Under the pieces are notes generated by a model, which did not search any database, was not told where the DNA came from, and saw nothing but the letters and a program-made list of their open reading frames with translations. From NCBI GenBank assembly GCA_965649765.1, contig OZ287752.1:26102001-26166000 (forward strand): a DNA stretch of 64,000 nucleotides, in the 5' to 3' direction. Made by a program: the position numbers and the translations under genes. This document shows positions 12,663 through 44,170 of this stretch, one piece after another (positions within the stretch are counted from its first letter, which is position 1; the number at the start of each line of letters is the position of its first letter). The DNA is from Bispira polyomma (Eukaryota).

Positions 12663-13003
12663 ATAATGGATGTATACAGGATACAATTTAAACATCTTGT
12701 GATATATACTAGTACAGGGAGTGTTTTTCTTAACATCAAATTAGCAGTTGATTAACCTTTAATTACCCCAAGGATTCACCATGGCAAAGTTTCCTATATT
12801 CAGTAAGCTGCACAGTCTATAATGGACGTATACAGGATATAATTTAAACATTGTGATATATACTAGTACAGGTATTGTTTTTGTTATTATCTACTAAGCA
12901 GTGAATTAAGGGTACGGATTAAGCTTTTATTACATATTTAAAACATCCCAAGGATTCATCATGGCAGAGTTGGCTGTATTCAGTAGGAAGCTGTCCAGTC
13001 TAT
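12663..13003 (+). repeat. Diverged tandem duplication of the start region, creating uORF 12781-12822
   Basis: ATAATGGA.GTATACAGGATA...CCCAAGGATTCA.CATGGCA.AGTT occurs twice; the upstream copy reads MAKFPIFSKLHSL*. Confidence 0.85.
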
Positions 13004-13496
13004 CAAGGATATCTTCTATATTTTATATGCTGATGACACTACCGCTACTCTATCGTGAAATCTCTGCCACAGGACAGTTGTATTACCCGCCGTTCATTAA
13101 CCTAGCCCTAGACAAGCCAGTAGAACTCTTCCCTGAAAATGCTATATGCGGGTTAGAGCAGGCCTCGGAATTTTGTGAGAGTCGAACCCAGCAACAAAAC
13201 TTGTGCGACAAACTTGAGTGTCATGTGTCCTGTGGTGGTTCCGTTGACCTTCCTCATCATGACAATCTGTTTGAAGTACTCAACAATACACTTCCAAAAG
13301 AATGCGGCATACAGCGCAGTGCTTTTCGAGCTCCAGGGTCATCGCAGGATTCCTACGAGTTCCTATCTACAAACTCCTCTAGTGCGTGCTCTCTAAGTCT
13401 GTTAAAGAGCTCATTACTATTGCTATGGCTTCAGTCCAGCTGGAGTAAGACCTTAACGTTCTGGATCTGGAATGATCTGGAGGATTTACAGCAAGG
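12961..13496 (+). CDS. Receptor exon 1: signal peptide and usherin-like N-terminus
   Basis: ...ISATG|[36 protein letters not shown] resembles the usherin N-terminus; donor GG|gtaggt. Confidence 0.85.
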
Positions 13497-16400
13497 GTAG
13501 GTATACACACAGTAAGGGGGGTCACCCTAAATGAAGAAAACAGTCCAATTTTGATGAAAACAGGTCAAATTTGAGACACTTTAATGAAAAATGGGCTGTT
13601 TTCTTCACTTAGGGACACAGCACATTGAAGATGTATTATGATAATATACAAAATGAGAAGATGAATATCTATCTTGCACAATACAAATGTATCAATAATA
13701 ATTTATTTAAAAAAAGTTGAACCCCAATAGTCAGAATTTGTACTATCTGAATATTCAGTTTTATGAACTCTATTTCATTTCTGGTAAGATTATAGGTTCC
13801 GCTCTGTTTTATCCTTAGTTTGTACCTCTTCTATATTAATAACAACTTTAATTACTGGCATAGATTGTCACTCTCCAAGTGAGTGTGGATAACGGGGGCT
13901 ATGAAGAAAGACCCTGTTGCTTTGTAAACCTCTTAAGTTCGATCAGTCATGTATTTTGTTACACAATGAATGTATCCTAAAGGTAAGTTTTCTGCATATC
14001 TGGTTAAGGGCATTATAACATGTGTACACTATAAATTAAGGGCATAGAGTCTAAAGGTTATTTGAGAACATAACCTAGATACTGTGTACATACTTTCTGT
14101 CAGCTTTTAAACCATTCCTCTATATTTTCTACTTTCTATGCTTCCGCAAACATAGTGTGACCAACAGAGGTGGCACAATTAGAAAATGCATGTATGTGTG
14201 ATCAAAATCCTTTAAGTAAAACTCTGATAAGTGGACTTACCTGTTAAGTAAAAGTTATTATAAGGCCCCCTTGCTGCATTTCTAATTGCAATTGACCCTG
14301 TAGTTAAATTTCTGTCAAGTAGAACACTTTTTTCTGGTGCCTTAAGATTTGACCTAATTGACTTATAACGGTTCCACTATATATATGTCGTGACAGAAAA
14401 ACTCCAATCTGACAAGATTTGAAATTCTGTCCATAGAAACTCCAATCCTAGTTTATTCATTACTATGTGCATGATTAATGAGGATTGAAAAATCTTGCTC
14501 TTCTAACGTGTTTGTATAATAAAGGTTCTAATGTATAGCCTATTTTGACTTCTCTCCATTACAGGACTATGACTGAGATTGCCAGTACTGAAAATGTGCT
14601 GCTATTGAAAGTATTCAGATAACAGAGGTCCTACTGTTTAACATACATGACTTCTTTATTCCTATTAATGTACAGGACTGTGGCTGAGATTACCAGTGCT
14701 GAAGATGCTGTGGTATTGAAAGTGTTCCTCCGTGGACATCAGCTCATGTTGATGTCTGGCAGTGATTTAGTCAAAGAACCAGCCTGGATTGTTCCTAGGC
14801 AACAGTGGAACCATGTGACATTACAGGTAAGATCATGTGACATACCAGGATTTGAAGTTATTTAGGTGTGTTTTTAACACACTCCCCTACATATCCCACT
14901 CTGCTACTCTAATATCAGTATATGTGGGCTTTGATAATGAAAGGAGACGCTAAGAACCACTGGGCCATCACGGTCTTGTTTTGATATCATTCAGGCTTGT
15001 TGAAAGTGACCTTGAACCCAACTTAAAGTACAAATGTACATAAAATAATCAATAATGTTTAATGTATATTTTTTAGTACATTTCTACATTTATAAAGTGA
15101 AACTTGTATATAAAACCATCCAAGGGAACCCTCAAAGGTAGCCTTTTTTGATAGGTGGTCTTTTTATATAGAAGTTGAACAGGTAGTCCTTATACATAGG
15201 TGGTCTATGTATAGAGGTGGTCACTTGAGCAGGTTTATGCACTGTACATCTATTTCTTGCAGATCTACGAAGGTACCACATCGTTATTCCTGAATGGCTC
15301 CCTGGTGACTCCCTCCCAGTACGGTGCTACAAGATCAGTCCCTGGATTGACTAATTCTTTTGTCATAGGAGACAGTCACTCAGGTAAAACACAGCAAAAC
15401 TTTTTCTTTCTAAAAGTTCTGGTGTTAAACTCCATACTTTAATTGGACACGGCATAGACAGCCATATCGAAAAGAGTTTATACTACTATCACAGCCTTTT
15501 ACAGTTCAGTGACATCCTTAAGATTCAGCGTTTTGTGTTCATATGCCAAAATCCAACATGGCCGCACTCTGTCCACTAAATTCTAGAATCATTCCAGGGC
15601 ACTTTCAAACCAATAACTAGAAGGGTATTGGTGTGTATACATGCACTAAAATGGCACAGTGCCAAAAAGTAAATTTGTTAATCCACAAATTGTATTGGAT
15701 TCTGGTCTTGGTCCTTACCCGGTCGGCCATCCCTCTACTGGATTTCATGTCAAACTCCTGGTTACTTTTAAACTGACAGGACCAACCAACGGACACGGGT
15801 GAAAACATAACCTCCTTCGAACTCTATTCTTTTTGATATAATCTAATCAAACTTTTATAGCGCTTATTATCTCTTCATCATGGTTAATGCTAAGGCACAT
15901 ATATATCATGTGTATTCTCTGTTTTATCTTGAAATCATTATAATGTGTTTTATTGGGGTATGTTCTTCCAAAGTGAATTGCTAAAAGCCAGGGTAGGGGC
16001 TATTCAAAGGTCTGTAGCTGAGAGGAGTTTCTGACAAAATTCACCAGAATTTATACAATTTACAATTGGCAATCTTATACTGAGACAATATTTATGAACA
16101 GTGGACCTTAAAATTTTTACCAAAACATTGGACATATTAGATTTTACATGACAGAGTAAATATTGTTCTGTACATGGAACACTTCTTACAGTAACAAATT
16201 CACAATGTGTTGTGTATGCTCTCTGTGTGCGCTCTCTACCCAGGTATATAAATGGGTACCTGGCTGCTAGTGTGTGTGTTAGTCTGTGTGTGCCGTATGT
16301 GGCAGCACAGCTTTTATGTTTTCTGAGGGAGCTGAAACTGAACAATTGTTTTGACAAGTAGAAGAACCCAGCTAGCCTGGGGGTGTAAACTGTGTACAGT

Positions 16401-19400
16401 GCTTTGGAAAAAAACTAATTAACCCATATAAAAGCAAATTTACACTTAAATTTATGTCAACCTGTTTAATGTTGTTCACTTGTCTTACACACACAGGAGG
16501 AGAAAGGTTTGTGGGATTTCTAGATAGTATGGACCTTTACTACACGAGTGTCTCAAACAGGTGAGCTTCATCACGGACAATAATGATCAGACAAAGAATA
16601 TTTAGTAAATTTAAATTAGTGTTTAGTAAATTAAACTTAATGTTTAGTAAATTTATATTTAGTAAATTAAAATAATGTTTAGTAAATGTTAAACAGCTAA
16701 AGAAATTATTAGTTTGGCTACATTGATTAACAATTAAATACCTAGTACATGTGTATCATTCTCCTGTTTAACCCCTTTTTGTATCACTACATCTAATACA
16801 TAATTGTTAGCCTTCCCCTTTCTAGGATAAATTGACAACCCCCCCCCCCCCCCACTTTCCCTTTTTGGTAGGTTTACATGTCATAAATAATTTGTTTGTT
16901 TTTTTGTTTTTTTTTTCTCAGGGAAGTGATTGAAATCTTCACGGGTACCTTGCCCGAGACGAGAGTACTTTCCAATTGTCGCTGTAAGTCGGAGTACCCT
17001 GCCTTAAAAGACTCTGATATGTCATTCTGTGTACAAAATGAAGGGGAAGGACAGTCCACCTTGGAAACCTACAGGATAACTAGGTAAGTGTCTGGGACTT
17101 AAGGACTATACCATGACAAACAAGGGGTTTACAGGGGGGAATGTTATGTAGGACCACAAAGGTGAAGTCCAAGAGTGCTAAAATACCCTGTGTATAGCCC
17201 TGGCTTGAAATGGGGAAGTGTCTGTGAATTAAGGACTATACCATGACCAACACAGGGATGCTCGGGGAGGAATGTTACCATGATTGGAGGTGTAGGATCA
17301 CAAAGGTGAGGTTCAAGAGTGGTCAAATTACCTTAATAGCCATGGTTTGGAATAGGTGTCTGTGAATTAAGGACGACTATACCATGATAAACACAGGGAT
17401 GTTCGGGGGAGGAATGTTACCACGATCGAAGGTGTAGGATCACACAGCTGACTTACCTGTATGCCCCTGGTTTTAGAATGGGTTACTCTGATATATTTAA
17501 CATCTCCTTCTTTACTGGGAGAAAACAACTGAAGGAAATCTTTTGGCATGAGGTTACAGATAGCTGAAGTCACTAAAACACACACCACAAACTACTACCA
17601 GCATTCAATAACAACCTCACATACAATTTTTTTGAATGGGGAAGTGTGCTGTACTAACAATTTCCTACTGCAAGGAACTAAAGAAAAATAAAATAATATT
17701 ATGGTGTGTTGACTGCTTCCCGTTAGACATAGGTCCTGGGTGTAACAATTAATTGCCATGCAGTGACTGCTTGTCGACACACATGGGGGGTTGAAAGGCT
17801 TTATATATTACCTAAAAATGTTGCTGCATTTGAAAGTTATTGTATTGTATTATACATGTTTCTGACCAAACTATGTTAAAGAATAACTCTTTGTAAACTC
17901 GTATATTTCAAAACTTGTGGTAGAAAAGGTCCTAGTATTACTGCACAACATTAATTGCTTGTAAAGTTTGTTGTATTCTTTATATATCACCAGGAACTCC
18001 TACCCTATTGAATATGTCAATGATGGTAAACTGGACACACAGTGGATCTCTCAGCCTCCTACAGCCAGTAACAATGCACCCATACAGGAAACCCAGATTG
18101 TCATAGATCTAGAGCAGGAATATGAGGTAAGTACATACTATAGAAGGCCATTCAGTGGAGTGCATATCTCCACTAAGGTGACACAACAGTGTCAAATATT
18201 GTTTTTTTTTGTTTGAAAATCCTGGATCTGCCATTCCAAGCATATCTTCTCCCAAAGTTATAAGGCATTGTCTTCCTAATTAGCCCATGCCCCAGGGTCA
18301 ATTTTCATGTGAAATTTTGGTTCAGTTGTTTTTTGTGTAATCCTGGTGACAAAACAAACAAATTCATTTCACTTTTAACACTATCTTCAAATATGAAGTC
18401 AGATTTTACAAATATGTACTAATTTATCCAGAGGTATTAAAGAATTCAGATTTCAGCTGAGTATATGTTCGATAATATCAGCCTAAAAGTTTAGATAACA
18501 AAGGTAGTACTGTTCTTTGTTCTCCTGTAGGTCAGACATGTCGAGATCAAGTTCTACAGTCCCTACCCTAGTGTGATTACCATAGAGCGGCAGATGTCAG
18601 ACGGCGACAACTTTGAATATTGGCAGTTTTATTCCTCTGATTGTGAATCTTACACTAGTATCCCACCTAATGAAGTCCTCTCATCATCGGACGATGTGAC
18701 GTGCAGGCTCTTAGTAGAGTGAGTATTGTAGTAAGCAGTGTGAATTGTTAGCTTCTGGTGGAGTGAGTATGGCAGTAAACAATGTGAATTGTTAGCTTGT
18801 AGTAGAATGAGAATGGGAGTAATCAATGTGAATTGTTAGCTTCTAGTAGAGTGAGTATGGCAGTAATCAATGTGAAATGTTAGCTTTTATTAGAGTTAGT
18901 ATGGCAGTAATCAATGTGAATTGTTAGCTTCTATTAGAGTTAGTATGGCAGTAATCAATGTGAATTGTTAGCTTCTAGTAGAGTGGGTATGGTTGATATA
19001 AATGAATTTTTGAGCTTCTAACAAAGTGAATATGGTAGACATGAATGTAAATCTTGAGCTTCTAGTAGGGTGGGTATGGTAGTCATAAATATAAATATTG
19101 GCTTCTAGTAGAGTGAGTATGGTAGTTATAAATGTAAATATTGGCTTCTATTAGAGTGAGTATGGTGGGCATAAATGTAAATATTAAGGTTCTAGTAAAG
19201 TGAGTATGGTAAACATAAATGTAAATATTGAGTTTCTAGTAGAGTGAGTATGTTAGCCATAAATGCAATGTTGGGTTCTAGTAGAGTGAGTATGGTAGTC
19301 ATAAATAGAAATGTTGTCTTCTGGTATAGTAAGTATTGTACACATAAATATAGGCTTCAAATAGAGTCAGTACAGTAGACATAAACCCTGGCTTCTAAAA

Positions 19401-22400
19401 TAAAGCCAGTACAGTAAACATAAATGTAAATGCTGGCTTTTAGTAAAGAGAGTACAGTAGATATAAATGTAAATGTATGTGTTTTCAGTTGAACCTGTTA
19501 AGGTAGAACTCTGTTAAGACAATTTAGCCTTTATGTAGATAAACAATTACAGTCGTACAATTGAAAGGCATTTTCTTTAAAATCTGCCCTGTGGTGAAGG
19601 GGAAGTCTTCCTTAAGTAGAGGTATTTCTTGTGGTCCTTGAAGTTCTGCTTAAAGGGGTTTAACTGTATGTGTTACAGTGTTACCCATTTAAATCAGCTC
19701 TAGACAAACCATTTCTCTAAATTTTTACTTTGCTGCTCTAAATCCTGCTTAAACAGAGATATATTTGTCAGTTAAAATCATAGTGCCTTGTTTTAGATAA
19801 TTTTATGATAATTTAGCACAGCTGAAGATGTAAATATTATTGCTATGATTTATTTTAATGTTAAGACACCCCCCACCCCCCCCACCCCCCACCCCCCTAT
19901 CTCCTTGGAAAATGCAACCCCTGGGGCATTTATAACATAACATACAGTATATTTATTCCATTCTAGAGCCAATGAGGTGACCCCTTACACAGATGGGGAG
20001 AAAAAATTTGACCTTCTAAAAGGTCGGCCTGGACAGTCTGTTAGCGGAATGTTCACTCCTCTACTCAGGGACTTCATGAAGGCCAGACGTGTGAGGGTGA
20101 CCTTAAAAGGTCATGAATACGTCTCATTTGCAGAGCATAAATATCACAGTGTGTACGAAATCAAAATAAATGGAACGTAAGTAAATTGTATGGATTTCAT
20201 ATGATGGAAATGAATTAATAAATAACAACTGTTGACAAACCAGACTTATTATTCCTTTGAATACACACTTCAGTTCTTCTTTTAAATATACAGTGGAAAT
20301 TCTATCGTCCAAATTTCTTTTATTCGAATATTTGATTTTATGGCACCAGAGGGATTATTCTGAAGGGATGCTCCAGTTTAACACTCAACTATGACTCACA
20401 TAACTATTATTTAAAATACTAAAGTTATATATTGTGGTCCTTTTTGTTTGATGTACTCAATAAATATCTTTGAGATAAAATCACGACACTTGTATCATCC
20501 GTTTTCTCTTTCTCTAGGTGTGACTGTTCAGGACACGGTGTAGCCTGTGACACTTCTCTGAACCCCTATCAGTGTACCTGTGCTAACGACTCCTACACAC
20601 AGGGACGTCAGTGTGACCAATGCGTGGACAACTCCTACAGATTGCCAGACAAGGACCTCTATGATCCGGATTACTGCCAGCCATGTAACTGTCACTTGGA
20701 CGGAACTGATGGAGCTGATCCGGACTGTAATATTGTAAGTGATGTTACAGTAGTTTTATGTCCTCCAGAAAGTTAGTTATGTTGGTTTATTCATTAGCAG
20801 GATTATGCAAAAAAAATAAGAACTACTTGACTGATTTTAATAGATTAAACTAGGATCATTCGAGCCACTATGTATCTGCTTGTACCTGAGAGCCAAGACT
20901 TAGATCAAACTCAAGTCTTCTGTGTTCTTATGTCAGTGTGTTAGCCACTAGGAAGAGGACTAATCTATATGACCAAATGTAACATAGGGACCAGCCAATA
21001 TCAAATTTAAAGGTCATCAAGATTTTAGGTGATTTAGCCGCATCTTCTTCTCTGTTAGAGGAGTAAACGCAAGTTGTCTTGATAGATTGCTAGGGTTGTA
21101 TTCACAAACATCCTTAGAATGCAATTCGTAGAATTTTCTTAGGCTCGACCAATCAGATTGTTCCAAAATACGCTTTCAGCTCATCAAATTGGTTAAAATA
21201 AAAGACTAAGAATAAGAATCTTTGTGAATACCAGCCCTGGGCATCATTTCTGAGTGTGTTTCTTGTTTATATTAGGGAGAATTAAATCTGCCAAATCACA
21301 TATAAATCCCAATTGAAATACAGTAGAACCTCTATTGTCCGAACTTCTGTTATCAAATATTTAATTTTATTAACACATTTTGACTTTCCCACATTCATGT
21401 TTTCCTATTTCGTTACAATAAAATACCTCTTCTATTTAATGAACCTTCTATTATCCCATTTACTCTCACAACATGTTCTAATAATAGTGGTTCTACTGTA
21501 CTAATGACCAGCCCCAATGCAAGGTGTTCCTTACATTTCAGACTACTGGCCAGTGTAACTGTAAGATGAATGTAGCCGGGCTGATGTGTGACATCTGTTC
21601 ACCTGGACATTTTAACTTATCCAGCTCAAATCCAGAAGGTTGTCAGGCCTGTGACTGTGATATTGAAGGTAAATTATTTCTTTACCGTTTTACCTTTCTT
21701 TACATGTTTGAAACATACTTGTAAAAAAAAGACAATTACTCCACTGAACAACATTTCCAAGAGCAATTCTAACGAAATTTTAACAAGATTTTGCTTACAG
21801 CCAATAAGTGATCCCCCCAAAAAAACAAACAAACAAACACCCTAATGAATTGTTTGAAATTAAGTTTGTAATGAATCATTGACATTTTAATTATGTCCAC
21901 CCCAGTGGGGGTGGACATATTATTTTTGCTTTTTCCGGCGTCCGCCGTCCGTCACGCTTGGTTTCCGGTCATTTTAAGGAAAAGTATTTATTCTATGTTT
22001 ACCAAATTTGGTATGGGTGGTTATTGGGTTAATAGCTTGCATGGGATTGCTTTTGGTGAAGATAGCTCCATAGCTAACTGAGTAATAGCTACTTACTTAC
22101 TTTTATGTACTTCTTTTGTTTTCGGGCATTTTAAGGAAGCATATTTGACATATCTTTACCAAATTTGGTATGAGCAATAGCTAGGTCAATAGCTTGCTTG
22201 GGATTGCTTTTAGTGATAATAGCTATAGAACTGACTGAGTAATAGCTACTTAGCTACTTTGAGTAGCTTTTTTATTTTAAGCATTTCAAAGGAAAACAAT
22301 GTTTTCTAGCTTCACAAAAATTTATATGAAAGAAAATTGTGTCAATAGTTTGGCCAGGATAGCTTTTGGTTGGTGATAGCTTTGTAACTATAGCTAAGTG

Positions 22401-25400
22401 AGTAATAGCTACTTACCTACTTTTGTGTACTCCTTTCGTTTCCGGGCATTTCAAGGAAAAATATTTGACATATCTATACTTTGAGCCTACTCTGAATTGC
22501 ATTTCTGTTTTCACTCTTTTGAAGGAAACATATTTAACTCGTCTTTTTAAATTTGGTATGAAGGTTTATAGCGTCAATTGCTTGCTTGGTATTGTTGTTG
22601 GTGGTAATAGCTTTAACCTCCTGAGTAATAGCTACATAGCAAAAAACATTAATATGTCTATCTCCTAAACCGTGCGAGATAGAGCGATTTCGTCGAAATT
22701 TTCGACCCTGAGGGTATTTAAGCAATGTACTCTTGGCAATTTTGAAAAAAAATTTACTCTCCCCAAAAATGGCGACCATTTTTAATTTTTACCAAAAATG
22801 GAAAAACCTAAATTTGCTTCTATCTTCTTAATCGTGCGAGATAGAGCGATTTTGTCAAAATTTTTGACGCACAGGGTATCTAAGAAATGTACTATAGGCA
22901 ATTTTCAAAAAAAATTCCTCTCCCCAAAAATGGCGGCCATTTTAAATTTTCAAATTTTTGCCAAAACTGGAAAAACACAAATTTATTTCTATTTCCTTAA
23001 CCGTGCGAGAAAGAGCGATTTCGTTGAAATTTTAGACCCACAGGGTATCTAATCAATGTACTCTTGGCAATTTTTAAAAAGTTTTCCTCTCCCCAAAAAT
23101 GGCGGCCATTTTGATTTTTCGAATTTTTGCCAAAAAAAACAAAACAGTCCTGTAAGACTACTGTGCAATTGTTCGAAAAGGTTCATGGGGTGGACATTAC
23201 ACATACTCTTAACAGGGCGTCCTATTTCTAGTTGTCATTTAATTTTATTTTACCACAAAATATCCCGGAAACCAAAATTTATACCCATAATCAAAAGAAG
23301 AAACTATCCCATTCCCAATGGTACATTTTATACTCTTATATAATGTGTACAATAGGAGTGTAACAACCCAGTCTGTTATTGATGCATTTCCATTTATATA
23401 TTATAAGTGCAACCCTGTGTGCATTTATAATTGATAATTTTTGTAACAACCCAGTAAATGTTATTTAGTTTATTCCATTGGTCTATACATTATAAGTGCA
23501 ACATTTTGCTCATTTATTGATTTTTTTACCGCACAGTTGTTTATGGTTGTCAGTGTATTAATGTGCTTGCTCTTTTCTTGTAAAATCCACCCTGTTGTGT
23601 GGAAATTTCTCATTAAGTGGAGGTATTTATTCTGGTTCCTTGAGGTTTTAATTAAAGGGGTTCAACTGTATAAATAATTGAAATGAATTTTAGTGCAAAT
23701 GTAAACTTAGCCTACGCTTCCTTTCAGCCGACCACGACATAGGCCGATTTATTAACATTTAAGCTGTTTCCATGTCTGCCAATGTAGTGCTTTCTTTCAT
23801 CCAATATGTGATGAATATTCATTGGATGTTGATGGTCAAACAGTGTGAGAAAGCAATTTTTTTCGCTCCCAGACCGATAACATCTAAAGTTAGAAGAAGC
23901 ATCTGCCGACATGAGATCGGATATGACAAAAATCAGATGAAAGGAAGCACTTTATCATAACATCAAATAGTGACGGATAAATTTGGCCGACATCGGCCAG
24001 CAAAAATCGGCTAAAACGAAGCGTAAGCTGAGAGCTGTTTTTAATTTTTTATACTGTTTTTTTAAACTTTAGGTGTGTACAATATGAGTGCAATGTGCCA
24101 TGAATTAACTGGACAATGTCAGTGCAAGGACAACGTGGAGGGAGATCGTTGTGAGAGGTACAATAGTAGTTTCTATATCTGAGAAATAATATTTTTATCA
24201 GGCACAGCCTGGTGCCATTAAAAAAGGCGCTGCCATCTTAGAAGTAATATGTAAGGCCTTCATGGATTGGTTGGAAGCAATCCACCTGTCCAAACTGAGA
24301 GGTGTCAGATTTATAGTATCAGACACAGCCACCATGTTGGAAAATATATTTAAGGCCACAATGGATTTGTTGGACTGAGGGGTGTCAGTCACAATGTACA
24401 CCAATGTGTTTTTGAAAAGACAACTACTTAACACAATCCCATGGATATGCTTTTAAAAATGTATATAAAAGTAAGATTAATAATTCCAGTGGTGAGAGGA
24501 TGCAAACATAGAGTGTTTTGCATCCTATTTATTGAAACGCAAGAACTAATTCATTAAGATGGTATTGTGACCTGGTTTCTGAGATGACATTATAATAAAC
24601 ACTGCATCTCATTAGGGTGTTTTTGACCAAGTCCCTTTTTGTGGTAGTTTGTAACACTACAAGGGCGGTCGTAATAGTGTCTGGGTCATAATATTGGCCG
24701 ACGCACGTTTTAATGTATGAAACGTAGATTTCTCAAAAATTAAATATATTATTCTGTAATTTAATTCACAGGTATAAAGTAGCATGTGTTTTCAATATTG
24801 ATTTCCGTCAGTAAGGGTGAAAGAGAGTTGCGCCCCTTGCCGCCGGACGCTACAGGTTGGGTTAACACCCCCGTCTGGTTGCTTTTTCATTAACCAGCTG
24901 TTAACGCCACTACCCTTACGACCTTGCTATGCCCATGGACTTTATGATTGGATCACTGATTCTGCTGTTGCGCTTTAGAAGATGCTTTAGAAGATGCCAT
25001 TATTATGACCTGGACATTATTCTGACCACCCGTGTAATAGCTGTAAAGTTGACCACTGTGTTTTATCATTTATATATAGCTGTAAAGTTAATCACCATAT
25101 GGTTTGTGTTTCATACATACAGCTGTAAAGTTGAGCATTGTATTTTGTATTTCTTATATAGCTGTAAGGTTGAGCACTACAGTCTATCAGAAGATAACCC
25201 CCTGGGCTGTACACCATGTGATTGTCATCCCTCGGGGGTCAAGGACAGTCGCACCGATTGTGATCTCAATACAGGACAGTGTCTCTGTAAAACTTTAGCT
25301 ACAGGTATGATATGATAAATTTGAACTTGTACCTGCTTTGTGACTGTATACATGGCGTACAGTTACGTTAATTGATTCAACACTTTAAAAAAGACTACAT

Positions 25401-28400
25401 ATATGTAGTTTATGGAAATAACCCACAATTGTGATGCAACATTGAGCACCAAATATGCAGGCAGATAATCTTTACCCGAATTCCTTCTTGTGAGAGATAT
25501 ACTGAAACTTGGAGTTGAGTTTGAGTTATTTTGATACTGTTTTGATACTATGGCCAGTTTTGATCAGTGTGTCTTCTGACATTTAACATTAAGAATATAC
25601 CAACCTACAAAAATCTAATAAAAAAATTATTTTTTTTATTCCCATACTAGATTTACAGTGCGATAAATGTGAACCAGGTTACTATGACCTAGATTCCACC
25701 AATGAGGTTGGTTGCTCTCCCTGTAACTGTAACCTTGATGGCTCCCACAATTCCTCATGTGACCTTGAAACCGGTCAGTGCTTCTGTAAGCCAAACATCA
25801 TCGGCCTCTTGTGCGACCGATGTGACAGTAGCTTTTTCGCCCTGAATAATGAGGACTTTATCGAATATGGCTGCAGCCACGCCTGCAATTGTGATGGCAA
25901 CGGAACAATAGGTGGTAGTACAGAATGCGCGGAAATTGGCGGAAACTGCCAATGTCGTCCAAACACCAAGGGCCGGCAATGTGACCAATGCAAGGCGCTG
26001 ACCTATGGTTTCGGCTCGTCAGAAAATAACGGTTGCCGAGCCTGCGACTGCGACACTCGTGGGACGGAGAATGGCGACATCGGCTGTGACTCTACAACGG
26101 GCCAGTGCGAGTGTAAGCTGTACACTACAGAGAGGAGATGTGACACATGTCTGACTGGCTATTATAACGAGACTAAGGAGAATGCCCAGGGTTGTACTTA
26201 CTGTGACTGCTACCCTATAGGGTCAACACAAGATGGGGACTGTGACGAGGTGACTGGGCAGTGTGTGTGTAAAGACAATGAAGGAGACTCGACACTAGGG
26301 GGAAGACAGTGTGTATGTATATAGTTATTATCCACTATGGTATGTACATATATAAGCAAGGAAAATCATAGACCAGGGAACAGTTTTTCTTCATATCCTC
26401 TGCCACCAGTAAAAAATGTATTTGAAAAGTGTAGTATTTCACTGATATTTACAAGGATGTAGTCAGGGTTTTTTGGTGGTTTTTTTTTGGTCGCTATAAT
26501 ATTCAACAGAGAAATCTAACAAAATTCTTTGAAATATATAATACAATAAAACTTTCATTTAATGCCTTCGAATAGTAAACATTTCTCTCTTATGTAATAC
26601 TCAGTACTTTAGTCCATTGAAATTTTACATTATACAGTCCAACCACTTAAGTGGAACTCTGATAAGTCGATTTTCCTGTTATGTTGAAGTAAACCTCTGG
26701 TCCCAGTATGGCATTTTCTTTTAAAATCTACCCTGTTAAGTGGAAGTCCTGCTTAAGTAGAGGTAATTCTTCTGGTCTATTGAGGTTCTACTTAAAGGAG
26801 TTTAACTGCATATGAGCTGAAGGGGACCATGCCTCAAAGTATTTGTTTTGGCTCACTGATCTTACAATGCACACGTGTAGGGTATTCAATTTACATCTAC
26901 AATGCACACATATTCCATGTACAGTACAATGATGAACAATTTTTCCCAGTCCTTTTTTTGCCACCATTAAATTGTACAGTACCTGTGAATAGTAAACATC
27001 TCTTTGTAGCTTTTAAATACACATAACAATTAAAAACTTTTACAGTAACTGTATATACTACCTTTTTACTTATGATCAGTCATATATATAAATATATGTT
27101 ACAGTGAAGCTGTGTAATCACTGATTATGTGTAATTTTTATCAAATACACATAATCTCTGAACTTTAAGTGCCCAAATTTAACAACTTTGCTTAAAGTAG
27201 ATTCAGTAAATAATTTTTTTGTGAAAGAGAAAAATAACTGTTAAATATTTTTCTATTTCTGTTTTTACCAACTTTCTACTATCTCAACAACATCTTACCT
27301 CTTCAAACATGTTTTGGATGTTACAGTTTCCACTGTACGTGTTATATCCTATTTCATATTTTATTTCATTATTCTTTTTAATTTCAGAATGCTTACATCA
27401 CTTCCATTATCCCTAACCGGGGGCCCGAGTCAGGTGGTACAGAGATCACAGTGAGGGGAGGGTACATGGGGAACTCCACTGCTACCATGGTAACCATAGG
27501 AGACATGGACTGTCCTATAGTGGAGGAGAAAAGGTGATATATTTTTTTCAGCAAAAGTGGAGCCAATATTAAAGAAACCAATGTTAATACATTGTGATGT
27601 AACATATATTGTCAAAAAAAATATAATAGTAATATATTAAAAAGTTGAACGATCTACAAAATAATCTGTGCCAGTATTCACAAAAGGGCTGAGTCTAGAA
27701 ATTGTCCTAAATCTAGCACCAAAGTGTACTAGATCTAAGACAATGCCACCACTTAGCCCTGTATTCTTAACTATGGGTCAATGCATTTACATGCAGAGCT
27801 ACTTTATCATACATTACTATCTAATACATGTCACAATTTTAACATTTTTAAAACTGCCTAAAGAAGAGATGTAAAAATTTCCCATCATATTTTTGTGTAA
27901 TACCTGCTAAAATATTGGCATTTAGTGGTCTGAGAATCTCTTTTCAAAAAGGTGACTATAATTAGAGAGGGAGCCTTTATTATGGAAAATACTGTAATAA
28001 AAAAACTATAAAAACGCAGTCACATGATAATGGTTCAGAAATCTGTCATGAGCTTTTTACAACTAATGAAAAAGACCAAAAGTGTGCAGTGAACAGTGCA
28101 CCAGTTGTACGCATACATTATCTTGAGAGTCTATAATCTAATCTAATCAATTCTGTGATGGCGCTTATTCTTCATACTACATGTAGTGGATTCTAAGGCG
28201 TAATAATCAAAATCATCGTTCAGTAGTCTTGTTGTGATGGGCAGAGAGTCATTACCAGAAGCTAATCTCATGCCAGTAAAGTATAATTGATCCGACAGTT
28301 TTGTGTATTTTGCATTTGTTGTGTAGGTCAGCCACCTCAGTGACTTGTATCAGTAGCAGACTAAATGGTACGGACACAGAGTTCCTAGATATACCACAGC

Positions 28401-31400
28401 CAGTGCTGGTCACACTGCCAGATGGACGGGTTATAGACTACAGCTTTGAGTTCACATTTAAACATGACCCAGTCATTCAGACAGTTAAGCCATTGTCTAG
28501 TATACTGAGGTAAGTACATAGGTAATCCATAGTACAGTAGAACCTTTATTATACGATCTTCTATATATTAAACACGACCCAGTCAGTCAGACAGTGAAGC
28601 CACTGTCTATTTTACTGAGGTAAGTTTATGTCATGTAAAGATATCATCTTTGGATACACATTAATATAGACAGCCATTATGAACCTTGTCAGCTAATGGA
28701 TAAATTTTTTGTTGAGCAATTAATTACAATGAAAATTTAAGGGTCTTTATTAGGAGCAAAGGACTGTTTCTAAAGTGGGGGGTAGGGGAGATCTTTTTGA
28801 AAAGAAGTGGAGAGTCTGGAAACAAGTATTCCAGTTTATGTAATCCATAATAATGTAGGACCAAGCCTCCTCTGTCCAGTATACTGAGGTAAGTTAATAT
28901 ACATACAGTAGAACCTCTACTATTCAAACTTCTATTGTCAGAACTTTTGGTTTTAACTACTTTCCAGTCTCCTAAATTTTCGTTTTCCTGTCATTTTATT
29001 CTAAAATACCGGGGCATCTCTTCTTTTTTATGTACCTTCTATTATCCAAACAAAATCTTGGTTTCCAAAGATGTTTGTATAATAGAGGTTCTACTGTACT
29101 TCATACATTTCTCACTCTCAAGTTATACTTACAATGACCTGTATATTTTGTTGTTTGTTTTACAGTGGTGGGATTCCCTTGACAGTAACTGGCATCTTTT
29201 TAGATTCTGTGGCATTTCCTTATTTGGAAATTACCATGGTCTACACCCCAGAGACTGGGCCCATAGAAGAGGCCATGTTTGACACAGTAAGTTTGGTTTA
29301 ATTACATAAAAGACACACACATGGCTATAATAGGACAAAGGGGCATGTACATTGCAATTTTTTGGTTAAGTATTATTTGTAAACAGAGTTTGGAATTGTG
29401 ACTAGTATATTTTAAATGTATCTTCCTTAATTGCAAGCTTTGAAAATAGGAGTTGCTCTTCATAATATGTGGTTTTAATTATTTTCTGTAATGCTAGTAT
29501 ATTTAATTGAGTGGAGTTACGAGAACTTGTGAAATATATATAATTTACTCACTGTCTTAAACTTTTGTCTCAACCAATTTGGTTAGCTGAAAATATTGTT
29601 TTAATAAATTTGATTGGCTGAGACTAAGCAAATTATAAGAATTGTATTCTAAGAATGTTTGTGAACATGGCCCCCTGGTTTTATCACTAGGCAGGTGTTT
29701 GTTTGCTTTTTATGGTCACTATTTGGCAAAAATGCCATCTATTTACTGTAGTGTAAAGGAGCTTTATTGGTGCAGTACTACAACACTCACCTCCCACCTC
29801 TAATGTCCTGGTTCAAAACTCGGCCAGGCTTTAAGTGGGAAAGTTGGCACTTTTACCGATGGTCGCTGGTTTATAGTGTAGAATGTTGACGACCTAGTAT
29901 ACTCTGGTTTTCTCCAGCACTCCAACTGCCCATCGTAATGTGACCTATACAATGTGTTAAAAGCGATGTTAAATCTAAAATTAAAAAACAATACACAATG
30001 TAAACTGACATGGTGTTAGACACAGTTTAATAATTTGGGTAAAAAATTTATAGTCGATTTAGACACGTACAAATATAATTATTATTGCCTTGTAAATATT
30101 AATATAATGAAAATTAAAGTTGTATTTTAATCAACATGTGTTAAAATAGGATTTTGAATTACAGGAGACATTTGATTGATTAAATCAGATGGCCAATATC
30201 GAATTTAAAAGGTTATTGAATCAACAAGAACCAACTGCAGGCTTTGTGCAATTATTAGTATAAGTGTAATACATTATTTTATAACATTGCAGACTAGGTG
30301 TGGCTTTTATCTCAATTCTAACTTAACTTCACAATTAATACTTATGCCTAAAATTCATAATGCAGAACATTTACAAAATATCATAGAGGGTTGTATGCAT
30401 ATGATATATAGGCAGCCAGTGTGCATTATCGTTTCAGATGAATGTGTGCGTATAGACCAGAAAAGCGGCATTTCTACGCAACTCATTATGTTAGAATGTA
30501 AAACATAAGAACATTTTATCAAATAAATACCTATTTATTTTCCAGCTCTGTGCTGTGCAGTCAAACTTCGAAATGATCTGTCCCACCCCAAACATCACCT
30601 TACCTGAGAATTATAGAGCACCTGCAAGGAGGAAGCGTCAGACTGATACAACAGCCAATGAGTTTAAACTTAACAGTGACAGTTTGGAGTTTCTGATAGG
30701 CTTTCGACTGGATGGTGTAACAGACTATTTAGACTTAACCAGTCTCAGACCGGAATACAGTATTTTAACTGTGTATATCAATCCAGAATTTGAATCCTTT
30801 GAAGGAGATGGAATCAAAGTCTACAGACCGTACTGGCCATTTAATGATGACCATATTGCAATCAAGGTGGATTGAGATTTACATATTTTTGTCTGGGTAG
30901 CATGCTAACATTAATACACAATAGACCTTGGTTCGATCCCAGCCTGGCGCAACCCGGTTACAGGCAGAGGCATAGTGACTTGAATGACCACTAATAATTG
31001 CTAGTCCCCTGTCATTGGGTTATACCCCCAATCGCAGATGGTCATAAATGGTCATCCTAAAGCCTCTTTTTGCAATTAAAAGAATGACTGTTGTTTCTGG
31101 TTGACTGTACTTGGGCATTTTAAAAAAGGTGAATTAGTGCTTTAAATACCAGAGAAAGGTAGACGAATGCACTGAATATAAAATGGAATACAATACAATA
31201 CCAAATTATTGTGGGAGTTTAACTTTTAATAAATTTGTATTGTAATGTCATGATAGACATTATATTGGTGGAGAAAAGCGAAACAAAAAGTAGATTTTTT
31301 AAAACACCAGCCTTCACTAATTCTACAGGAACCTTCCCACATACATACTGTGGGTGAGATTAGAACCCACAACTGCAGAGGCTTCACTTCATCATTAATT

Positions 31401-34400
31401 GAAGCTTGCTATTATTTATCCTGTCACAAAATACAATATGTTTCTGTTGTCTAAACCTTTGTTATCTAAATATTTATTTTTAAGAAGATCCACAGATCCA
31501 CAACTTTATAATGGCGTTGTTTTATAAGTACATTAGTGATAATTAAAACACATAAATGTACACATTGTTAAATAGCTAAATCTTGTCCTTTTTAATACAG
31601 GGAGAAAGGCTTAACTACGGGGCTACAATGAGTGACTATAAAGTGACTATTGGAGATGCTGAGTGTACAGGTTTAGAGCTCACAGAGAACAGGATCTACT
31701 GCATCCCTCCAGACTCACAGCCAGGCATGTCAGAGTACGGAGACAAGGACGGGGCACCTGCATTTCTGGTAAATACATTGTACACTAAAGTTGATATATT
31801 GATTTAAACTTGTACTCGCAATGATTGACCCTTGTCTGGTACTTCAATTCTCACATGACACTGCTAGTGCTATATTACATGTAATTTATAAAAGAAGGTT
31901 CCAATATTTAGCTTCATATATGAGAAGGATGTCTTTAAATATTTCCCTATTTAGACCCTTATTCTCAAATTCATACTTGGCTTAAGTACATCCGGAGCTG
32001 TCTTCTCAAATCCAGACAATACTCAATTAGGGCAATGTATAAATTCCTCTATTTGGACAGAACTGATCACTCATTTTAATAATAGTGCTTTCATTGCTAA
32101 ATTCAAATACAGTCAAACCTCTTTAAGTGGAAATCTGATAAGTGGAATTACCTATTAAGTAGAAGTTATTGCAAGGTCCCAGTGCTATATTTCTAATTAA
32201 AATTTACCCTATTGAGTAGACTTTCTGTTAAGTAGAACAAAATGTTTATGGTCCCTTCAGATATAACAGGGTTTCACTGTGTGTAGTTAGATTTCACTTT
32301 ACATCCCTCTAGCCAGAGATAAGGACACCTTATATATAGAGTTCAATCTCAGTATAAGTTTGACTGGAAATTTTTTAGAGAAAATGGCCACTGTTTTTAC
32401 GGAAAGGCAAGCTACCACTCAGTGAACCATAGACTAAACCCCCCAAATGTTTTTTGGGTATTTTTATATTACAGATCAAAGTAGGCAACATCAAACACTT
32501 GGCCGGCTATTTAAAGTACGAGACGTCTTTCTGGGAGAATACAGTATTTCGTTGGAGTGTCGTGGGAGGCCTTATCTTGGTTGTCTTGATCATTGTCATC
32601 ATCATTATTGCCTGCTGTGTGTCCAAACACAGAAAGAATAAGGACAAAAGTACCAAGGAGAAAGAGCACCCCAAAATACTGGATCAGTTTGACCATTTCG
32701 ATCACTTTGACAACCACATTGGTAATGGACTGAACAACGGAAATGTCAACATCGCCATGCAGGAGAACCAGTACGTCACTGACCACTCAACGACGCTTCC
32801 AATGCCACCGAAAGCTGCCAGCAACGCATACACGGCTCCACCTCCATCCAGTTTCCAGCCGACCACTTTACCGATGCCACCTCGTAAGCACGAGTTCACT
32901 GCACCACCACCAGTAGCAGCTAAAAAGCCTCACAGGAGGGAGCAAGGTAAAGCCGGAGTTTTAACAGCTGAAGTTGTGATTTGTCTCCTAGCTTGTTTGT
33001 TAGCAGGTTTACGCAAAAACTTTATTGCGAATATTGAAGTTAAACTATTGTGATTATGTTTATACCATGTTTTCATCAGCTAATCTAAATATAACATGAA
33101 CATGTATTGTATTCTTCTCTAATTTACTAGTTTTAGAGAAATTCAGTGGAATTAATTTCACTATTGGTCATTTTTTGTGTTAAAATATTACTACAAATTA
33201 GAATTTTCACTGAGAATTAATTTTCACTATCTAAGGCCATTAGGCTAAAAATAGCTAAAACTAATTCCTCCTAGTAAACCTTGGGGGTCGCGATGGCCTA
33301 GTGGTTAGCAAATATTGCATTTCACAATTACTGGTCTCTCACCTCTGGGATCGGCTGGCATGGGTTCGACTCCCGACGATACCTATGTGGGAAAGGTGGT
33401 AGTTCCTTACTGTTGACTGCTGGTTTCAGTGCAGAATCTTGATCAACTGTATGCAATGTTTCCTCCAGCATTTCCAACTACCCGTCCCAATATAACCTAA
33501 ACAGGTACTAGAGTGGACGTTAAATATCCCAATTCAAAAAATAATTCCTGGTGAACCTTATACCACTTTAATAGAGCTGTTTCTCCCTTGTACGGTCTTT
33601 ACGCTTTCTGCGTTTAGACATATGTTTTGCACATGTATTACGGGATCAACATTTTTGTAATTAATTTTGAAAATTACTACTTAAACAGAGCTGTTTATCC
33701 TTAGTACTGTCTTCGCTGTTTCTATGTTTAGACATAGTGGACGTTAAATATCCCAATTCAAAAAATAATTCCTGGTGAACCTTATACCACTTTAATAGAG
33801 CTGTTTCTCCCTTGTACGGTCTTTACGCTTTCTGCGTTTAGACATATGTTTTGCACATGTATTACGGGATCAACATTTTTGTAATTAATTTTGAAAATTA
33901 CTACTTAAACAGAGCTGTTTATCCTTAGTACTGTCTTCGCTGTTTCTATGTTTAGACATATGTTTTTCATATTGTATTATAGGGTCAACTTCTTCCTACT
34001 TAAACCCCATGATGACACCGCAGATATTTGAAGTTATTACAGCAGAACTCAAGTACAAAGTAGATCAGGTTTCTGTGGAAGCCAACCGGTTGCAACTGGG
34101 CAAGGTAGTTCAACAAGGTAATGCATATACTGTGTAACCATCAAACTTTGCCACTGTATCTGAAATTTGCCACCTAGATATTGTGTTTTGTTTGGTAGAA
34201 TTGTAGATAACATTTGCTAAAACTGGAATTTTTGTGACTATTTTTGCCTTACTTACCTAAATCCCAGTTCTTTTTCGCCAGTTTTTTTTTTTATTGATTT
34301 TGGCTTAAATGTTAGATGTGGCGTATTTTAGATACAGTGGCAAATTTTAGATTCCTTACTCTATCACATAAAATGTTGTTGGTTCTTTTGCCTACACCTC

Positions 34401-40400: not shown

Positions 40401-40886
40401 TTTAGTCCTTGTGCGTCGCATGTGGCAGCACGGCTAGTATGCTCTCGAGGGAGCTGAGACTGAACAATTGGTGACCAAGTAAAAGAATCCAGGCTGGGGT
40501 GTAAACTGTACAGCGCCTTGTGAAAAAAAGCGCTTTATAAATTTACATTTACATTTAGTATACGTGCTACAATATTGGCATTTTACTGATCTAAAAATTA
40601 ATTAAAAAAGACAAAACAATTAGACAGGGGCGTGCCTTTATTACAGGAAATATGGTATATGTTTTATTATTTTTTGGTGTTGTTTTTTATCAAAAGGTAC
40701 ACTTTGATGCTGAATTGCTGGCACGAGTCTCCACGGCAACGACAAGGGTTTCACGAGATCACCGACAATATACAGAGATATTTAGACTTACAGAACACTA
40801 AGACTAACCTGAGGAAGAAGTCCAGTCAACAAGTGCCCAGTGCTAGGATAAAAGGCAATAACCACCTGCATCTCTACAACTTCTAA
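12961..40886 (+). CDS. Usherin-ectodomain / IPT / MET-RYK-like (pseudo)kinase receptor, 26 coding exons, 1736 aa
   Basis: join(12961-13496,14676-14826,15263-15383,16497-16560,16922-17083,17994-18126,18531-18718,19967-20176,20518-20734,21542-21668,24073-24157,25162-25304,25651-26312,27388-27533,28327-28509,29166-29286,30546-30866,31601-31768,32475-32946,33983-34117,34754-34837,35536-35717,37483-37592,37942-38104,38983-39119,40697-40886). All introns GT-AG with compatible phases; total 5211 nt; no internal stops seen. Confidence 0.88.
14676..14826 (+). CDS. Receptor exon 2 (LamG-like)
   Basis: tacag|G TVAEITS...QWNHVTLQ|gtaaga. Confidence 0.85.
15263..15383 (+). CDS. Receptor exon 3 (LamG-like)
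   Basis: [12 protein letters not shown]...[10 protein letters not shown]|gtaaaa. Confidence 0.85.
16497..16560 (+). CDS. Receptor exon 4 (end of LamG-like domain), absent from the ORF track
   Basis: [21 protein letters not shown]; acacag| and |gtgagc. Confidence 0.85.
16922..17083 (+). CDS. Receptor exon 5
   Basis: [26 protein letters not shown]...FCVQN, matching the usherin CRCP..HP...C linker. Confidence 0.88.
17086..17450 (+). repeat. ~130-140 bp tandem repeat, about 3 copies, starting at the exon 5 donor
   Basis: GTGTCTG.GA.TTAAGGACTATACCATGA...GAATGTTA...GTAGGA.CACA repeated. Confidence 0.8.
17994..18126 (+). CDS. Receptor exon 6 (laminin N-terminal domain)
   Basis: [19 protein letters not shown]...[10 protein letters not shown]|gtaagt. 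Confidence 0.9.
18531..18718 (+). CDS. Receptor exon 7 (laminin N-terminal domain)
   Basis: [21 protein letters not shown]...[11 protein letters not shown]...DDVTC. Confidence 0.9.
18709..19476 (+). repeat. ~43-44 bp minisatellite (about 17 copies) built from the exon 7 splice donor
   Basis: Unit AGCTTCTAGTAGAGTGAGTATGGCAGTAATCAATGTGAATTGTT. Confidence 0.92.
19967..20176 (+). CDS. Receptor exon 8 (laminin N-terminal domain)
   Basis: FDLLKGRPG...[14 protein letters not shown]...[11 protein letters not shown]. Confidence 0.9.
20518..20734 (+). CDS. Receptor exon 9 (laminin-EGF 1-2)
   Basis: [35 protein letters not shown]. Confidence 0.9.
21321..21498. mobile_element. Tc1/mariner-type MITE
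   Basis: TA|CAGTAGAACC...GGTTCTACTG|TA; relatives at 28906-29096 and 41686-41875. Confidence 0.75.
21542..21668 (+). CDS. Receptor exon 10 (laminin-EGF)
   Basis: [39 protein letters not shown]. Confidence 0.9.
21888..23232 (+). mobile_element. Helentron/HINE-like non-autonomous element with two internal tandem-repeat arrays
   Basis: T-rich start, 5' palindrome ATGTCCACCCC-AGTG-GGGGTGGACAT, GTCC motif, 3' subterminal IR GGGGTGGACAT (23187-23197), terminal CTAG followed by TT; ~140-bp and ~165-bp internal repeats. Confidence 0.75.
23709..24029. mobile_element. MITE with ~23-bp imperfect TIRs
   Basis: AGCCTACGCTTCCTTTCAGCCGA / TCGGCTAAAACGAAGCGTAAGCT. Confidence 0.6.
24073..24157 (+). CDS. 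Receptor exon 11 (laminin-EGF)
   Basis: [20 protein letters not shown]. Confidence 0.9.
25036..25180 (+). repeat. Four tandem copies (39/43/39 bp spacing) of the exon 12 acceptor
   Basis: AG|CTGTAA(A/G)GTT with AG ending at 25040, 25079, 25122 and 25161. Confidence 0.88.
25162..25304 (+). CDS. Receptor exon 12 (laminin-EGF)
   Basis: [25 protein letters not shown]...TGQCLCK. Confidence 0.9.
25651..26312 (+). CDS. Receptor exon 13 (laminin-EGF 4-8, last repeat truncated)
   Basis: [11 protein letters not shown]...GGRQC|gtatgt, phase 0. Confidence 0.92.
27388..27533 (+). CDS. Receptor exon 14 (IPT/TIG 1), absent from the ORF track
   Basis: [28 protein letters not shown]...VTIGDMDC, the canonical IPT P..GP.SGGT.IT..G pattern. 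Confidence 0.9.
28327..28509 (+). CDS. Receptor exon 15 (IPT 1-2)
   Basis: SVTCISS...[19 protein letters not shown]. Confidence 0.9.
28906..29096. mobile_element. Tc1/mariner-type MITE
   Basis: TA|CAGTAGAACCTCTA...TAGAGGTTCTACTG|TA. Confidence 0.75.
29166..29286 (+). CDS. Receptor exon 16 (IPT 2)
   Basis: [19 protein letters not shown]. Confidence 0.9.
30546..30866 (+). CDS. Receptor exon 17 (IPT 2-3, RRKR site)
   Basis: [15 protein letters not shown]...ARRKRQ...IGFRLDGV...VYINPEF. Confidence 0.9.
31601..31768 (+). CDS. Receptor exon 18 (IPT 3)
   Basis: [22 protein letters not shown]...IYCIPP. Confidence 0.9.
32475..32946 (+). CDS. Receptor exon 19 (transmembrane helix and Pro-rich juxtamembrane)
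   Basis: IKVGN...[30 protein letters not shown], basic stop-transfer KHRKNK. Confidence 0.9.
33283..33540 (+). mobile_element. tRNA-derived SINE (family A)
   Basis: A box TGGCCTAGTGG, B box GGTTCGACTCC, shared body TATGTGGGAAAGGTGGTAGTTCC; copies at 36678 and 62606. Confidence 0.85.
33513..33960 (+). repeat. Apparently identical 224-bp tandem duplication
   Basis: 33513-33736 matches 33737-33960 by eye. Confidence 0.9.
33983..34117 (+). CDS. Receptor exon 20 (juxtamembrane and kinase start)
   Basis: STSSYLNP...[11 protein letters not shown]|gtaatg. Confidence 0.82.
34754..34837 (+). CDS. Receptor exon 21 (kinase subdomains I-II)
   Basis: GKVGQIC...PVLVKTLS. Confidence 0.88.
34913..35165. 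mobile_element. piggyBac-like MITE remnant
   Basis: TTAACCCTTTGACCCC terminus and inverted GGGATCAAAAGGG; related pieces near 17500-17770 and 37150-37221. Confidence 0.5.
35536..35717 (+). CDS. Receptor exon 22 (kinase subdomains III-V)
   Basis: [26 protein letters not shown]...PSMENGNLK. Confidence 0.9.
35731..36073 (+). mobile_element. LINE 3'-end fragment with (TAA)n tail, same family as 8117-10037
   Basis: Reverse-complement similarity to 8120-8460 (AAAAGCTTAAAA.CTATCTTTTTAACC); TAA tail; smaller pieces at ~24915-25000 and 38190-38420. Confidence 0.75.
36678..36945 (+). mobile_element. tRNA-derived SINE (family A)
   Basis: GGGGCCGCGGTGGCCTAGTGG...; flanked by the direct repeat CCTATTGATCCCTAGG, a probable TSD. 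Confidence 0.85.
37483..37592 (+). CDS. Receptor exon 23 (catalytic loop)
   Basis: [36 protein letters not shown]. Confidence 0.93.
37942..38104 (+). CDS. Receptor exon 24 (activation segment)
   Basis: [18 protein letters not shown]...PIRWMSLE...FTSKSDV. Confidence 0.93.
38572..38912 (+). mobile_element. tRNA-derived SINE (family B)
   Basis: GTGGCCTAGCGGTTAG...GGTCGATCC head and ACATTT tail; 3' parts recur at ~16220-16450 and ~40378-40556. Confidence 0.7.
38983..39119 (+). CDS. Receptor exon 25 (kinase subdomains IX-X)
   Basis: [21 protein letters not shown]...[14 protein letters not shown]. Confidence 0.93.
40697..40886 (+). CDS. Receptor exon 26 (kinase subdomain XI and tail)
   Basis: [21 protein letters not shown]...HLYNF*. 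Confidence 0.9.
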
Positions 40887-43479: not shown

Positions 43480-44170
43480 CATTTAGGAACAAAATAGGGT
43501 AAATCTCTTACTATCTGTGTCTTCGATCCCTCGAGTCTCAACAAAGCTGTTGTAACTGCCCTTATTAAGACGTCTTCATTACCAAGAATGAACTTAAAAA
43601 AATGATTGGCCTGTTTCAGGATCGTGTTTCACCTCTAAATTGATAGAACTGGTAGCCTTGGTAGCCAGGTATGGCAAATGGCATTGAAAACATCTACCAA
43701 TCACCATTCTACAGAAAAGGCCATATTTAATTCAACAAGTGATACTTATACAACTGTATCAAAGGGAGTTTCTAATATAGTTGCACTACTGTACCTGTCA
43801 GCATTTTTTGACACTAATGATCACGATATTCTTAACAACCATCTTCAAACATGATTTAGTCTCGATACTTTGCAAATAGTTTGTACCCTATTTGGCTGGC
43901 AGGTATCAGTCTATTAAAATTAGCAATATTCTTCTGTCAGACCCAGAGTTGCTAAAATTTGGTGTGCCCTAAGGGGACGAATTTTGTTTTCCCTCAGTAA
44001 AATTACATCCTCCAATAGTTCATTAAAGTATCATTTGTATGCTGATGACAGACATGTTTATGTGCATCTTACCCCTGCTACTTCAGCTGGTGTCTTTGTG
44101 AACATTTTATAAAATGCTTGGCAGATGTTCAGAACTGGATGGCCTCAAATAGGCTCAAGTTGAACTCAAT
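43480..44170 (+). mobile_element. Highly degraded LINE RT fragment
   Basis: Remnant DLSA.FDT..H, GVP.G, LYADD, WMASNRLKLN. Confidence 0.75.

What the first reader, a model, noticed from the sequence alone, without database searches (positions are those of the whole stretch)
12961..40886. Chimeric receptor: usherin-type LamG/LamNT/laminin-EGF ectodomain fused to a MET-like IPT-TM-tyrosine kinase module
Seen: 26 GT-AG exons join in compatible phases into one 1736-aa ORF: signal peptide, LamG-like, laminin N-terminal, 7 full plus 1 truncated LE repeats, ~3 IPT, TM, kinase. Established: this N-terminal order with the CG....FC and CRC...P....C motifs is characteristic of usherin (USH2A), which continues into FN3/LamG repeats and has no kinase. 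IPT-TM-kinase is the C-terminal part of MET/RON, which normally has Sema-PSI at the N-terminus. Inference: exon shuffling replaced the Sema ligand-binding module with a laminin/netrin-like module, giving a receptor that could sense basement membrane or act in ciliary/mechanosensory links. I do not know of a described RTK class with this architecture, but cannot search to confirm.
Basis: partly seen in the sequence, partly recalled or inferred. Interest (0 to 1): 0.95.

Follow-up and report, generated by a model that had tools for sequence, protein, structure and literature searches.

The report
Usherin-headed MET-type receptor, likely pseudokinase
A receptor gene joins the front end of usherin (the Usher-syndrome protein) to the stalk and kinase of a MET-type receptor; a distant animal has the same gene with an intact kinase, while this copy's kinase looks switched off, and I found no description of this receptor class.

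Summary
Confirmed. 26 GT-AG exons (12961-40886) give one 1736-aa frame: usherin-type N-terminus, LamG-like, LamNT, 7 LE repeats plus a 6-cysteine partial one, 3 IPT, TM, tyrosine kinase. No RNA run exists; DNA contigs tile across the seam. The strongest evidence is a second animal (L043, 37% identical): the whole architecture lies within 18 kb, and 15 of its 18 compared introns match in position and phase, including the LE|IPT seam. Both copies share a deletion fusing usherin's LE1 and LE2. Their LamNT domains group with usherins, not laminins (100/100). The genome keeps separate usherin-like, RYK-like and PSI-IPT-kinase genes. One correction: this kinase is probably dead or weak (DFG to DRA, HRD to HKD, alphaC Glu to Asp, Gly-loop altered), resembling RYK by convergence; the orthologue and three related kinases keep these motifs. 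A paralogue carries the same IPT-TM-kinase cassette after an Ephrin_rec_like exon, with the same phase-0 intron. Ten literature searches found no description. Ligand and role are untested. Two first-reader notes on this same stretch (seam, pseudokinase) agree; the scan showed nothing similar on other DNA.

The parts
12961..13496 (+). Exon 1: ATG, probable signal peptide, usherin-type Cys-rich N-terminal segment, start of LamG-like domain
14676..16560 (+). Exons 2-4 (14676-14826, 15263-15383, 16497-16560): LamG-like domain
   Evidence: aligns to the PF13385 region of usherins P0093 and P0146
16922..20176 (+). Exons 5-8 (16922-17083, 17994-18126, 18531-18718, 19967-20176): laminin N-terminal domain of usherin type
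   Evidence: Pfam PF00055; tree
20518..26312 (+). Exons 9-13 (20518-20734, 21542-21668, 24073-24157, 25162-25304, 25651-26312): 7 full LE repeats (the first a fusion of usherin LE1 and LE2 halves) and a last repeat with 6 of 8 cysteines
26313..27387 (+). Seam intron, phase 0, between the last LE cysteine and IPT1; same position and phase in L043
27388..31768 (+). Exons 14-18 (27388-27533, 28327-28509, 29166-29286, 30546-30866, 31601-31768): three IPT/TIG domains
   Evidence: PF01833 in exons 14 and 18; colinear with L043, L046 and own C6 paralogue
30627..30638 (+). RRKR, furin-type site in a loop of the second IPT; basic clusters at the same place in L043, L046 and the C6 paralogue
   Evidence: cleavage is inferred
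32475..32946 (+). Exon 19: end of IPT3, transmembrane helix (about 32550-32618), Pro-rich juxtamembrane stretch that is longer than in L043
33983..40886 (+). Exons 20-26 (33983-34117, 34754-34837, 35536-35717, 37483-37592, 37942-38104, 38983-39119, 40697-40886): MET-type kinase domain with degenerate motifs (HKD at 37564-37572, DRA at 37973-37981), short tail, stop

Best explanation
One gene for a single-pass receptor of an old invertebrate subfamily. A duplicate of the 5' part of usherin (N-terminal segment, LamG-like, LamNT, LE repeats) was joined, at a phase-0 intron just before IPT1, to the three-IPT/TM/kinase cassette of a MET-type receptor. Shown: the frame, the domains, the conserved orthologue, the shared introns, the usherin ancestry. 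Inferred: the LE rod and IPT stalk hold the LamG/LamNT head away from the membrane, where it binds a matrix or cell-surface partner, as usherin's N-terminus is reported to (own knowledge); the stalk may be cut by furin; ligand-driven clustering switches on the kinase in species with an intact one. In this species the kinase has probably lost most or all activity and the protein would act as a co-receptor or scaffold, as RYK does, perhaps with one of the genome's active MET-type kinases.
For: Open frame with GT-AG introns. L043, on a 419-kb contig from another sample, holds exon 1 to kinase within 18 kb; 37% identity over 1352 aligned residues and 15 of 18 introns shared, including the seam. 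Shared deletion of about 68 aa relative to Patella and Caretta usherin. The last LE keeps 6 cysteines in both, so none need be unpaired. LamNT tree: window + L043 sisters 90/83, with usherins 100/100. Exon-1 tree: canonical usherin clade 99/99 holds the genome's own C2 gene and excludes this one. Own genome: usherin-like gene at C2:52.16-52.35 Mb, PSI-TIG-kinase genes at C4:43.18-43.22 and 43.36-43.40 Mb, WIF plus kinase at C10:16.50-16.52 Mb. Exon 25 is 57% identical to the C6 MET-type paralogue, 42% to the C10 RYK-like gene; MET is its best close PDB match. Degenerate motifs involve several base changes; L043, L046, L047, L049 keep HRD and DFG.
Against: No RNA across any junction. Only one other locus shows both halves; L046 starts at IPT1 and L047/L049 hold only the kinase. 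The kinase tree leaves the five family rows weakly grouped (35/40) and had no vertebrate MET or RYK in it. The catalytic Asp, the beta3 Lys and the Asp of DFG are still present, so residual activity is possible. No ligand or expression data.
Confidence: 0.8

Rival explanations
1. Two neighbouring genes: a secreted short usherin-like protein and a MET-type receptor with its own start.
For: No RNA available; intron 13 has three possible poly(A) hexamers and an in-frame stop three codons in.
Against: Same seam intron, same phase and same 6-Cys end in L043; exon 14 starts directly in IPT1 with no signal peptide; stopping in intron 13 would need the same read-through in both species.
Confidence: 0.05
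2. One gene as described, but the kinase is still active or weakly active in this species.
For: Beta3 Lys, catalytic Asp, catalytic-loop Asn and the first Asp of DFG are kept; one activation-loop tyrosine remains.
Against: Four motifs are changed at once; DxA and HKD match the RYK pseudokinase (DNA seen in 6TUA; HKD from own knowledge); the YY pair is YW; the branch is longer than in relatives (0.83 against 0.05-0.3).
Confidence: 0.2
3. The kinase came from RYK (a second shuffling or gene conversion), not from the MET-type cassette.
For: Human RYK is the best PDB match for exon 24 (36.7 bits against 33.8 for MET).
Against: The genome's own RYK-like gene is not among the 12 matches to exon 24 and scores low on exon 25; kinase introns and subfamily motifs match L043, L046, L047, L049, which have DFG.
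Confidence: 0.05
4. Assembly chimera or decaying pseudogene.
For: The only raw data are from one study and may be the source of the assembly.
Against: Short-read contigs tile 24958-27740; one X3 contig from another haplotype or repeat-bearing allele bridges the gap at 26721-26769; no stops or frameshifts in 1736 codons; independent locus L043.
Confidence: 0.02

Closest known systems
Usherin (USH2A)
   Same: N-terminal segment, LamG-like, LamNT and LE repeats in the same order; LamNT groups with usherins; several intron positions match the Mercenaria usherin locus and the genome's C2 gene.
   Different: Stops after 7 LE plus a partial repeat; lacks the FN3/LamG array; LE1 and LE2 fused by a deletion; continues into IPT-TM-kinase.
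MET/RON and Met-LP receptors (PMC6374515)
   Same: IPT stalk, TM and MET-type kinase.
   Different: No Sema or PSI; three IPT rather than four (Met) or six (Met-LP). That survey collected only Sema-containing proteins, so it could not have seen this class.
RYK / Derailed pseudokinase
   Same: DxA in place of DFG, HKD, altered Gly loop.
   Different: No WIF domain; the genome has a separate WIF-kinase gene; relatives have intact kinases, so the likeness looks convergent.
Netrin, netrin-G, laminin short arms
   Same: LamNT followed by LE repeats.
   Different: LamNT falls outside laminin alpha, beta and gamma; netrins were not in the tree; has a LamG-like domain in front, a TM and a kinase.

Membership tests
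Usherin | LamG-like, LamNT, LE order at the N-terminus | tested here: met
Usherin | LamNT groups with usherins rather than laminins | tested here: met
   100/100
Usherin | About 10 LE followed by FN3/LamG array, no kinase | tested here: not met
   7 LE plus a partial one, then IPT
Usherin | Is the genome's usherin orthologue | tested here: not met
   the C2 gene falls in the usherin clade, this one does not
MET/RON/Met-LP | N-terminal Sema and PSI | tested here: not met
   no Sema or PSI match at this locus
MET/RON/Met-LP | IPT domains before the TM | tested here: met
MET/RON/Met-LP | Kinase groups with MET-type kinases | tested here: inconclusive
   groups with the genome's PSI-IPT kinases against RET/ROR/ROS-like outgroups at 80/94, no vertebrate references; PDB ranking differs by exon
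MET/RON/Met-LP | Intact HRD, DFG, alphaC Glu and activation-loop YY | tested here: not met
   HKD, DRA, Asp, YW here; intact in L043
MET/RON/Met-LP | C-terminal two-tyrosine docking site | tested here: not met
   tail tyrosines at 1702 and 1734 lack the motif (motif from own knowledge)
RYK | WIF ectodomain | tested here: not met
   only WIF match is on C10
RYK | No catalytic activity | not testable with these tools
   needs an assay

The most novel reading that the evidence does not exclude
An undescribed, old class of receptor tyrosine kinase in marine invertebrates that couples usherin's ligand-binding head to MET-type signalling, one of several ectodomains swapped onto the same IPT-TM-kinase cassette, and which has turned into a RYK-like pseudokinase in this lineage.
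Probability: 0.6. Interest if true: 0.82.

Novelty: new variant of a known kind. Interest (0 to 1): 0.74.

Why it matters
It would add a receptor tyrosine kinase architecture missed by surveys keyed on the Sema domain. The partners of usherin's LamG/LamNT head are poorly defined (own knowledge); a natural usherin-head kinase gives a phosphorylation read-out for finding what that head binds. The pair of an intact orthologue and a degenerate copy also lets one test how an RTK becomes a RYK-like pseudokinase. The shared phase-0 intron before IPT1 in genes with different heads suggests a reusable docking point for exon shuffling.

Tried and rejected
The joined protein was not sent to any search tool; it was built only inside scripts for frame checks, pairwise alignments and trees, and searches were run exon by exon by reference. 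For that reason, and because of the length limit, full-length annotated relatives of about 1700 aa could not be seen: three homologue searches returned usherin and laminin pieces and none with a TIG or kinase part. No RNA run was found; the three runs laid were DNA. Walks from five other exon-1 relatives (L041, L042, L045, L057, L058) met no further exon within 10 kb. The intron-poor sequences P0031 and P0068 looked like family members in the exon-1 tree but fell among usherins with a long-branch warning in the LamNT tree, so I do not count them. P0056 (Mercenaria 'usherin-like') is ordinary usherin. The protein atlas gave only generic LamNT and LE clusters. Ten paper searches found no description. 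Host species of L043 and L046-L050 could not be identified. No structure prediction was run, because single exons would not test the seam.

Full report
Observation. I read the region and placed the exons by hand. The 26 exons between 12961 and 40886 join into 5211 nt with a single terminal stop, 1736 aa, all introns GT-AG and in phase. The LamG-like domain is supported by alignment to the Laminin_G_3 region of two annotated usherins. The LE region has 62 cysteines: seven full repeats and a last one with six, which keeps three of the four disulphide pairs (pairing from established LE structure). The joined protein was not submitted to any search tool.

One gene or two. No RNA run holds the sequence. 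Three DNA runs from one study tile the seam region with contigs; they may be the source of the assembly, so this is weak support. The decisive evidence is comparative. Exon 1 found about 40 relatives. One of them sits on a 419-kb contig from another sample, where exon 1, LamG-like, LamNT, LE, IPT, TM and kinase exons follow on one strand within 18 kb (L043). From LamNT to the end it is 37% identical over 1352 aligned residues, and 15 of its 18 introns fall at the same position and phase as in the window, including the phase-0 intron straight after the last LE cysteine. From LE to stop its exons also form one open frame. A third locus, L046, begins at IPT1 and shows the same IPT, TM and kinase signatures; L047, L049 and L050 show the same kinase signatures. 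Their N-terminal halves are off the contigs.

Origin of the head. In a LamNT tree the window and L043 are sisters (90/83) and join four usherins at 100/100, apart from laminin alpha, beta and gamma (one mis-cut laminin row fell inside as a long branch). Both lack about 68 residues present in Patella and Caretta usherin, which fuses the front of LE1 to the back of LE2. In an exon-1 tree 16 sequences, including the genome's own gene on C2, form a usherin clade (99/99); the window, L043's exon and about 20 others lie outside it in an unresolved group. These may be further family members, but that is not shown. The C2 gene has a LamNT exon with the same limits and an FN3 match 190 kb downstream on the same strand, consistent with a full usherin.

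Origin of the tail. The genome has at least eight kinases of MET type. Two on C4 follow PSI and TIG matches, next to a Sema-PSI gene, as expected for Met, Met-LP and a plexin (PMC6374515). One on C6 (64.78-64.80 Mb) has the same three-IPT, TM, kinase exon series, with an Ephrin_rec_like exon upstream (E 2e-10) and no Sema or PSI match. Its IPT1 exon starts in phase 0 in the same register as here. So at least two different heads appear to sit on one cassette; whether that exon splices directly to IPT1 was not shown. The kinase tree puts the window among these MET-type kinases (80/94) and groups the five family rows only weakly (35/40).

The kinase. Against L043 the window has Q for the first Gly-loop glycine and V for its Phe, VLVK for VAIK, Asp for the alphaC Glu, HKD for HRD, DRA for DFG and YW for the activation-loop YY. 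The changes take several bases each, so they are not read errors. Exon 24 matches human RYK slightly better than MET, but the genome's own WIF-kinase gene on C10 is not among exon 24's matches and is only 42% identical on exon 25, against 57% for the C6 paralogue. All four relatives keep HRD and DFG. I read this as loss of activity in this lineage, converging on RYK; about 75% likely, untested.

How it likely works. Shown: a single-pass receptor with a usherin head on an LE rod and IPT stalk. Inferred: the head binds a matrix or cell-surface partner, the stalk may be cut at RRKR (basic clusters recur there in L043, L046 and the C6 paralogue), and clustering activates the kinase where it is intact. 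In this species the protein more likely serves as co-receptor or scaffold, using its kinase fold and a Pro-rich juxtamembrane stretch that is longer than in L043. A role in ciliated sensory cells is a guess from usherin biology.

Known or new. It fails membership of usherin, MET/RON/Met-LP and RYK on defining features, while sharing parts with each. The survey that defined Met-LP collected only Sema-containing proteins and does not mention laminin (PMC6374515); a 2022 review does not mention usherin (PMC10084454). Ten full-text searches found no description, but the library lacks many subscription papers, and automated annotations of such proteins may exist that I could not reach. Host species are not given; the closest exon-1 relative (58%) comes from a marine biofilm sample, and a lophotrochozoan host is my inference only.

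Verdict. Real, single gene with high probability, conserved in at least one distant animal, apparently undescribed; this copy is probably a pseudokinase. Interest 0.74.

Noticed in passing
G000:C6:64.78-64.80 Mb (L025-L027), minus strand: Paralogous three-IPT/TM/kinase gene with intact kinase and an Ephrin_rec_like (GCC2-type) exon upstream instead of Sema-PSI; similar kinases occur in L051 and L052, so possibly a second undescribed MET-type architecture.
   Followed up: partly
G000 C4:43.10-43.40 Mb: Cluster of a Sema-PSI gene and two PSI-TIG-kinase genes, like the plexin next to Met-LP noted in starfish.
   Followed up: partly
G000 C6:46.03-46.07 Mb (L020-L022), C14:23.67 Mb, C4:68.5 Mb, C11:27.34 Mb: Further MET-type kinases with unexamined ectodomains; the C6:46 Mb one has a TM after a Thr-rich stretch and no IPT match nearby.
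   Followed up: no
window 528-1977, minus strand: TRIM-like gene (RING, two B-boxes, coiled coil) with an apparent frameshift near 1312-1340.
   Followed up: no
window 14566-14620 and 28560-28620, 28840-28895: Partial tandem copies of the start of exon 2 (with acceptor) and of the end of exon 15 (with donor) in neighbouring introns; possible cryptic splice sites.
   Followed up: no
window 8128-9640, 43050-43850, 51560-52130: Decayed LINE-type reverse transcriptase fragments.
   Followed up: no
window 47223-48257, minus strand: 345-codon open frame of unknown kind.
   Followed up: no
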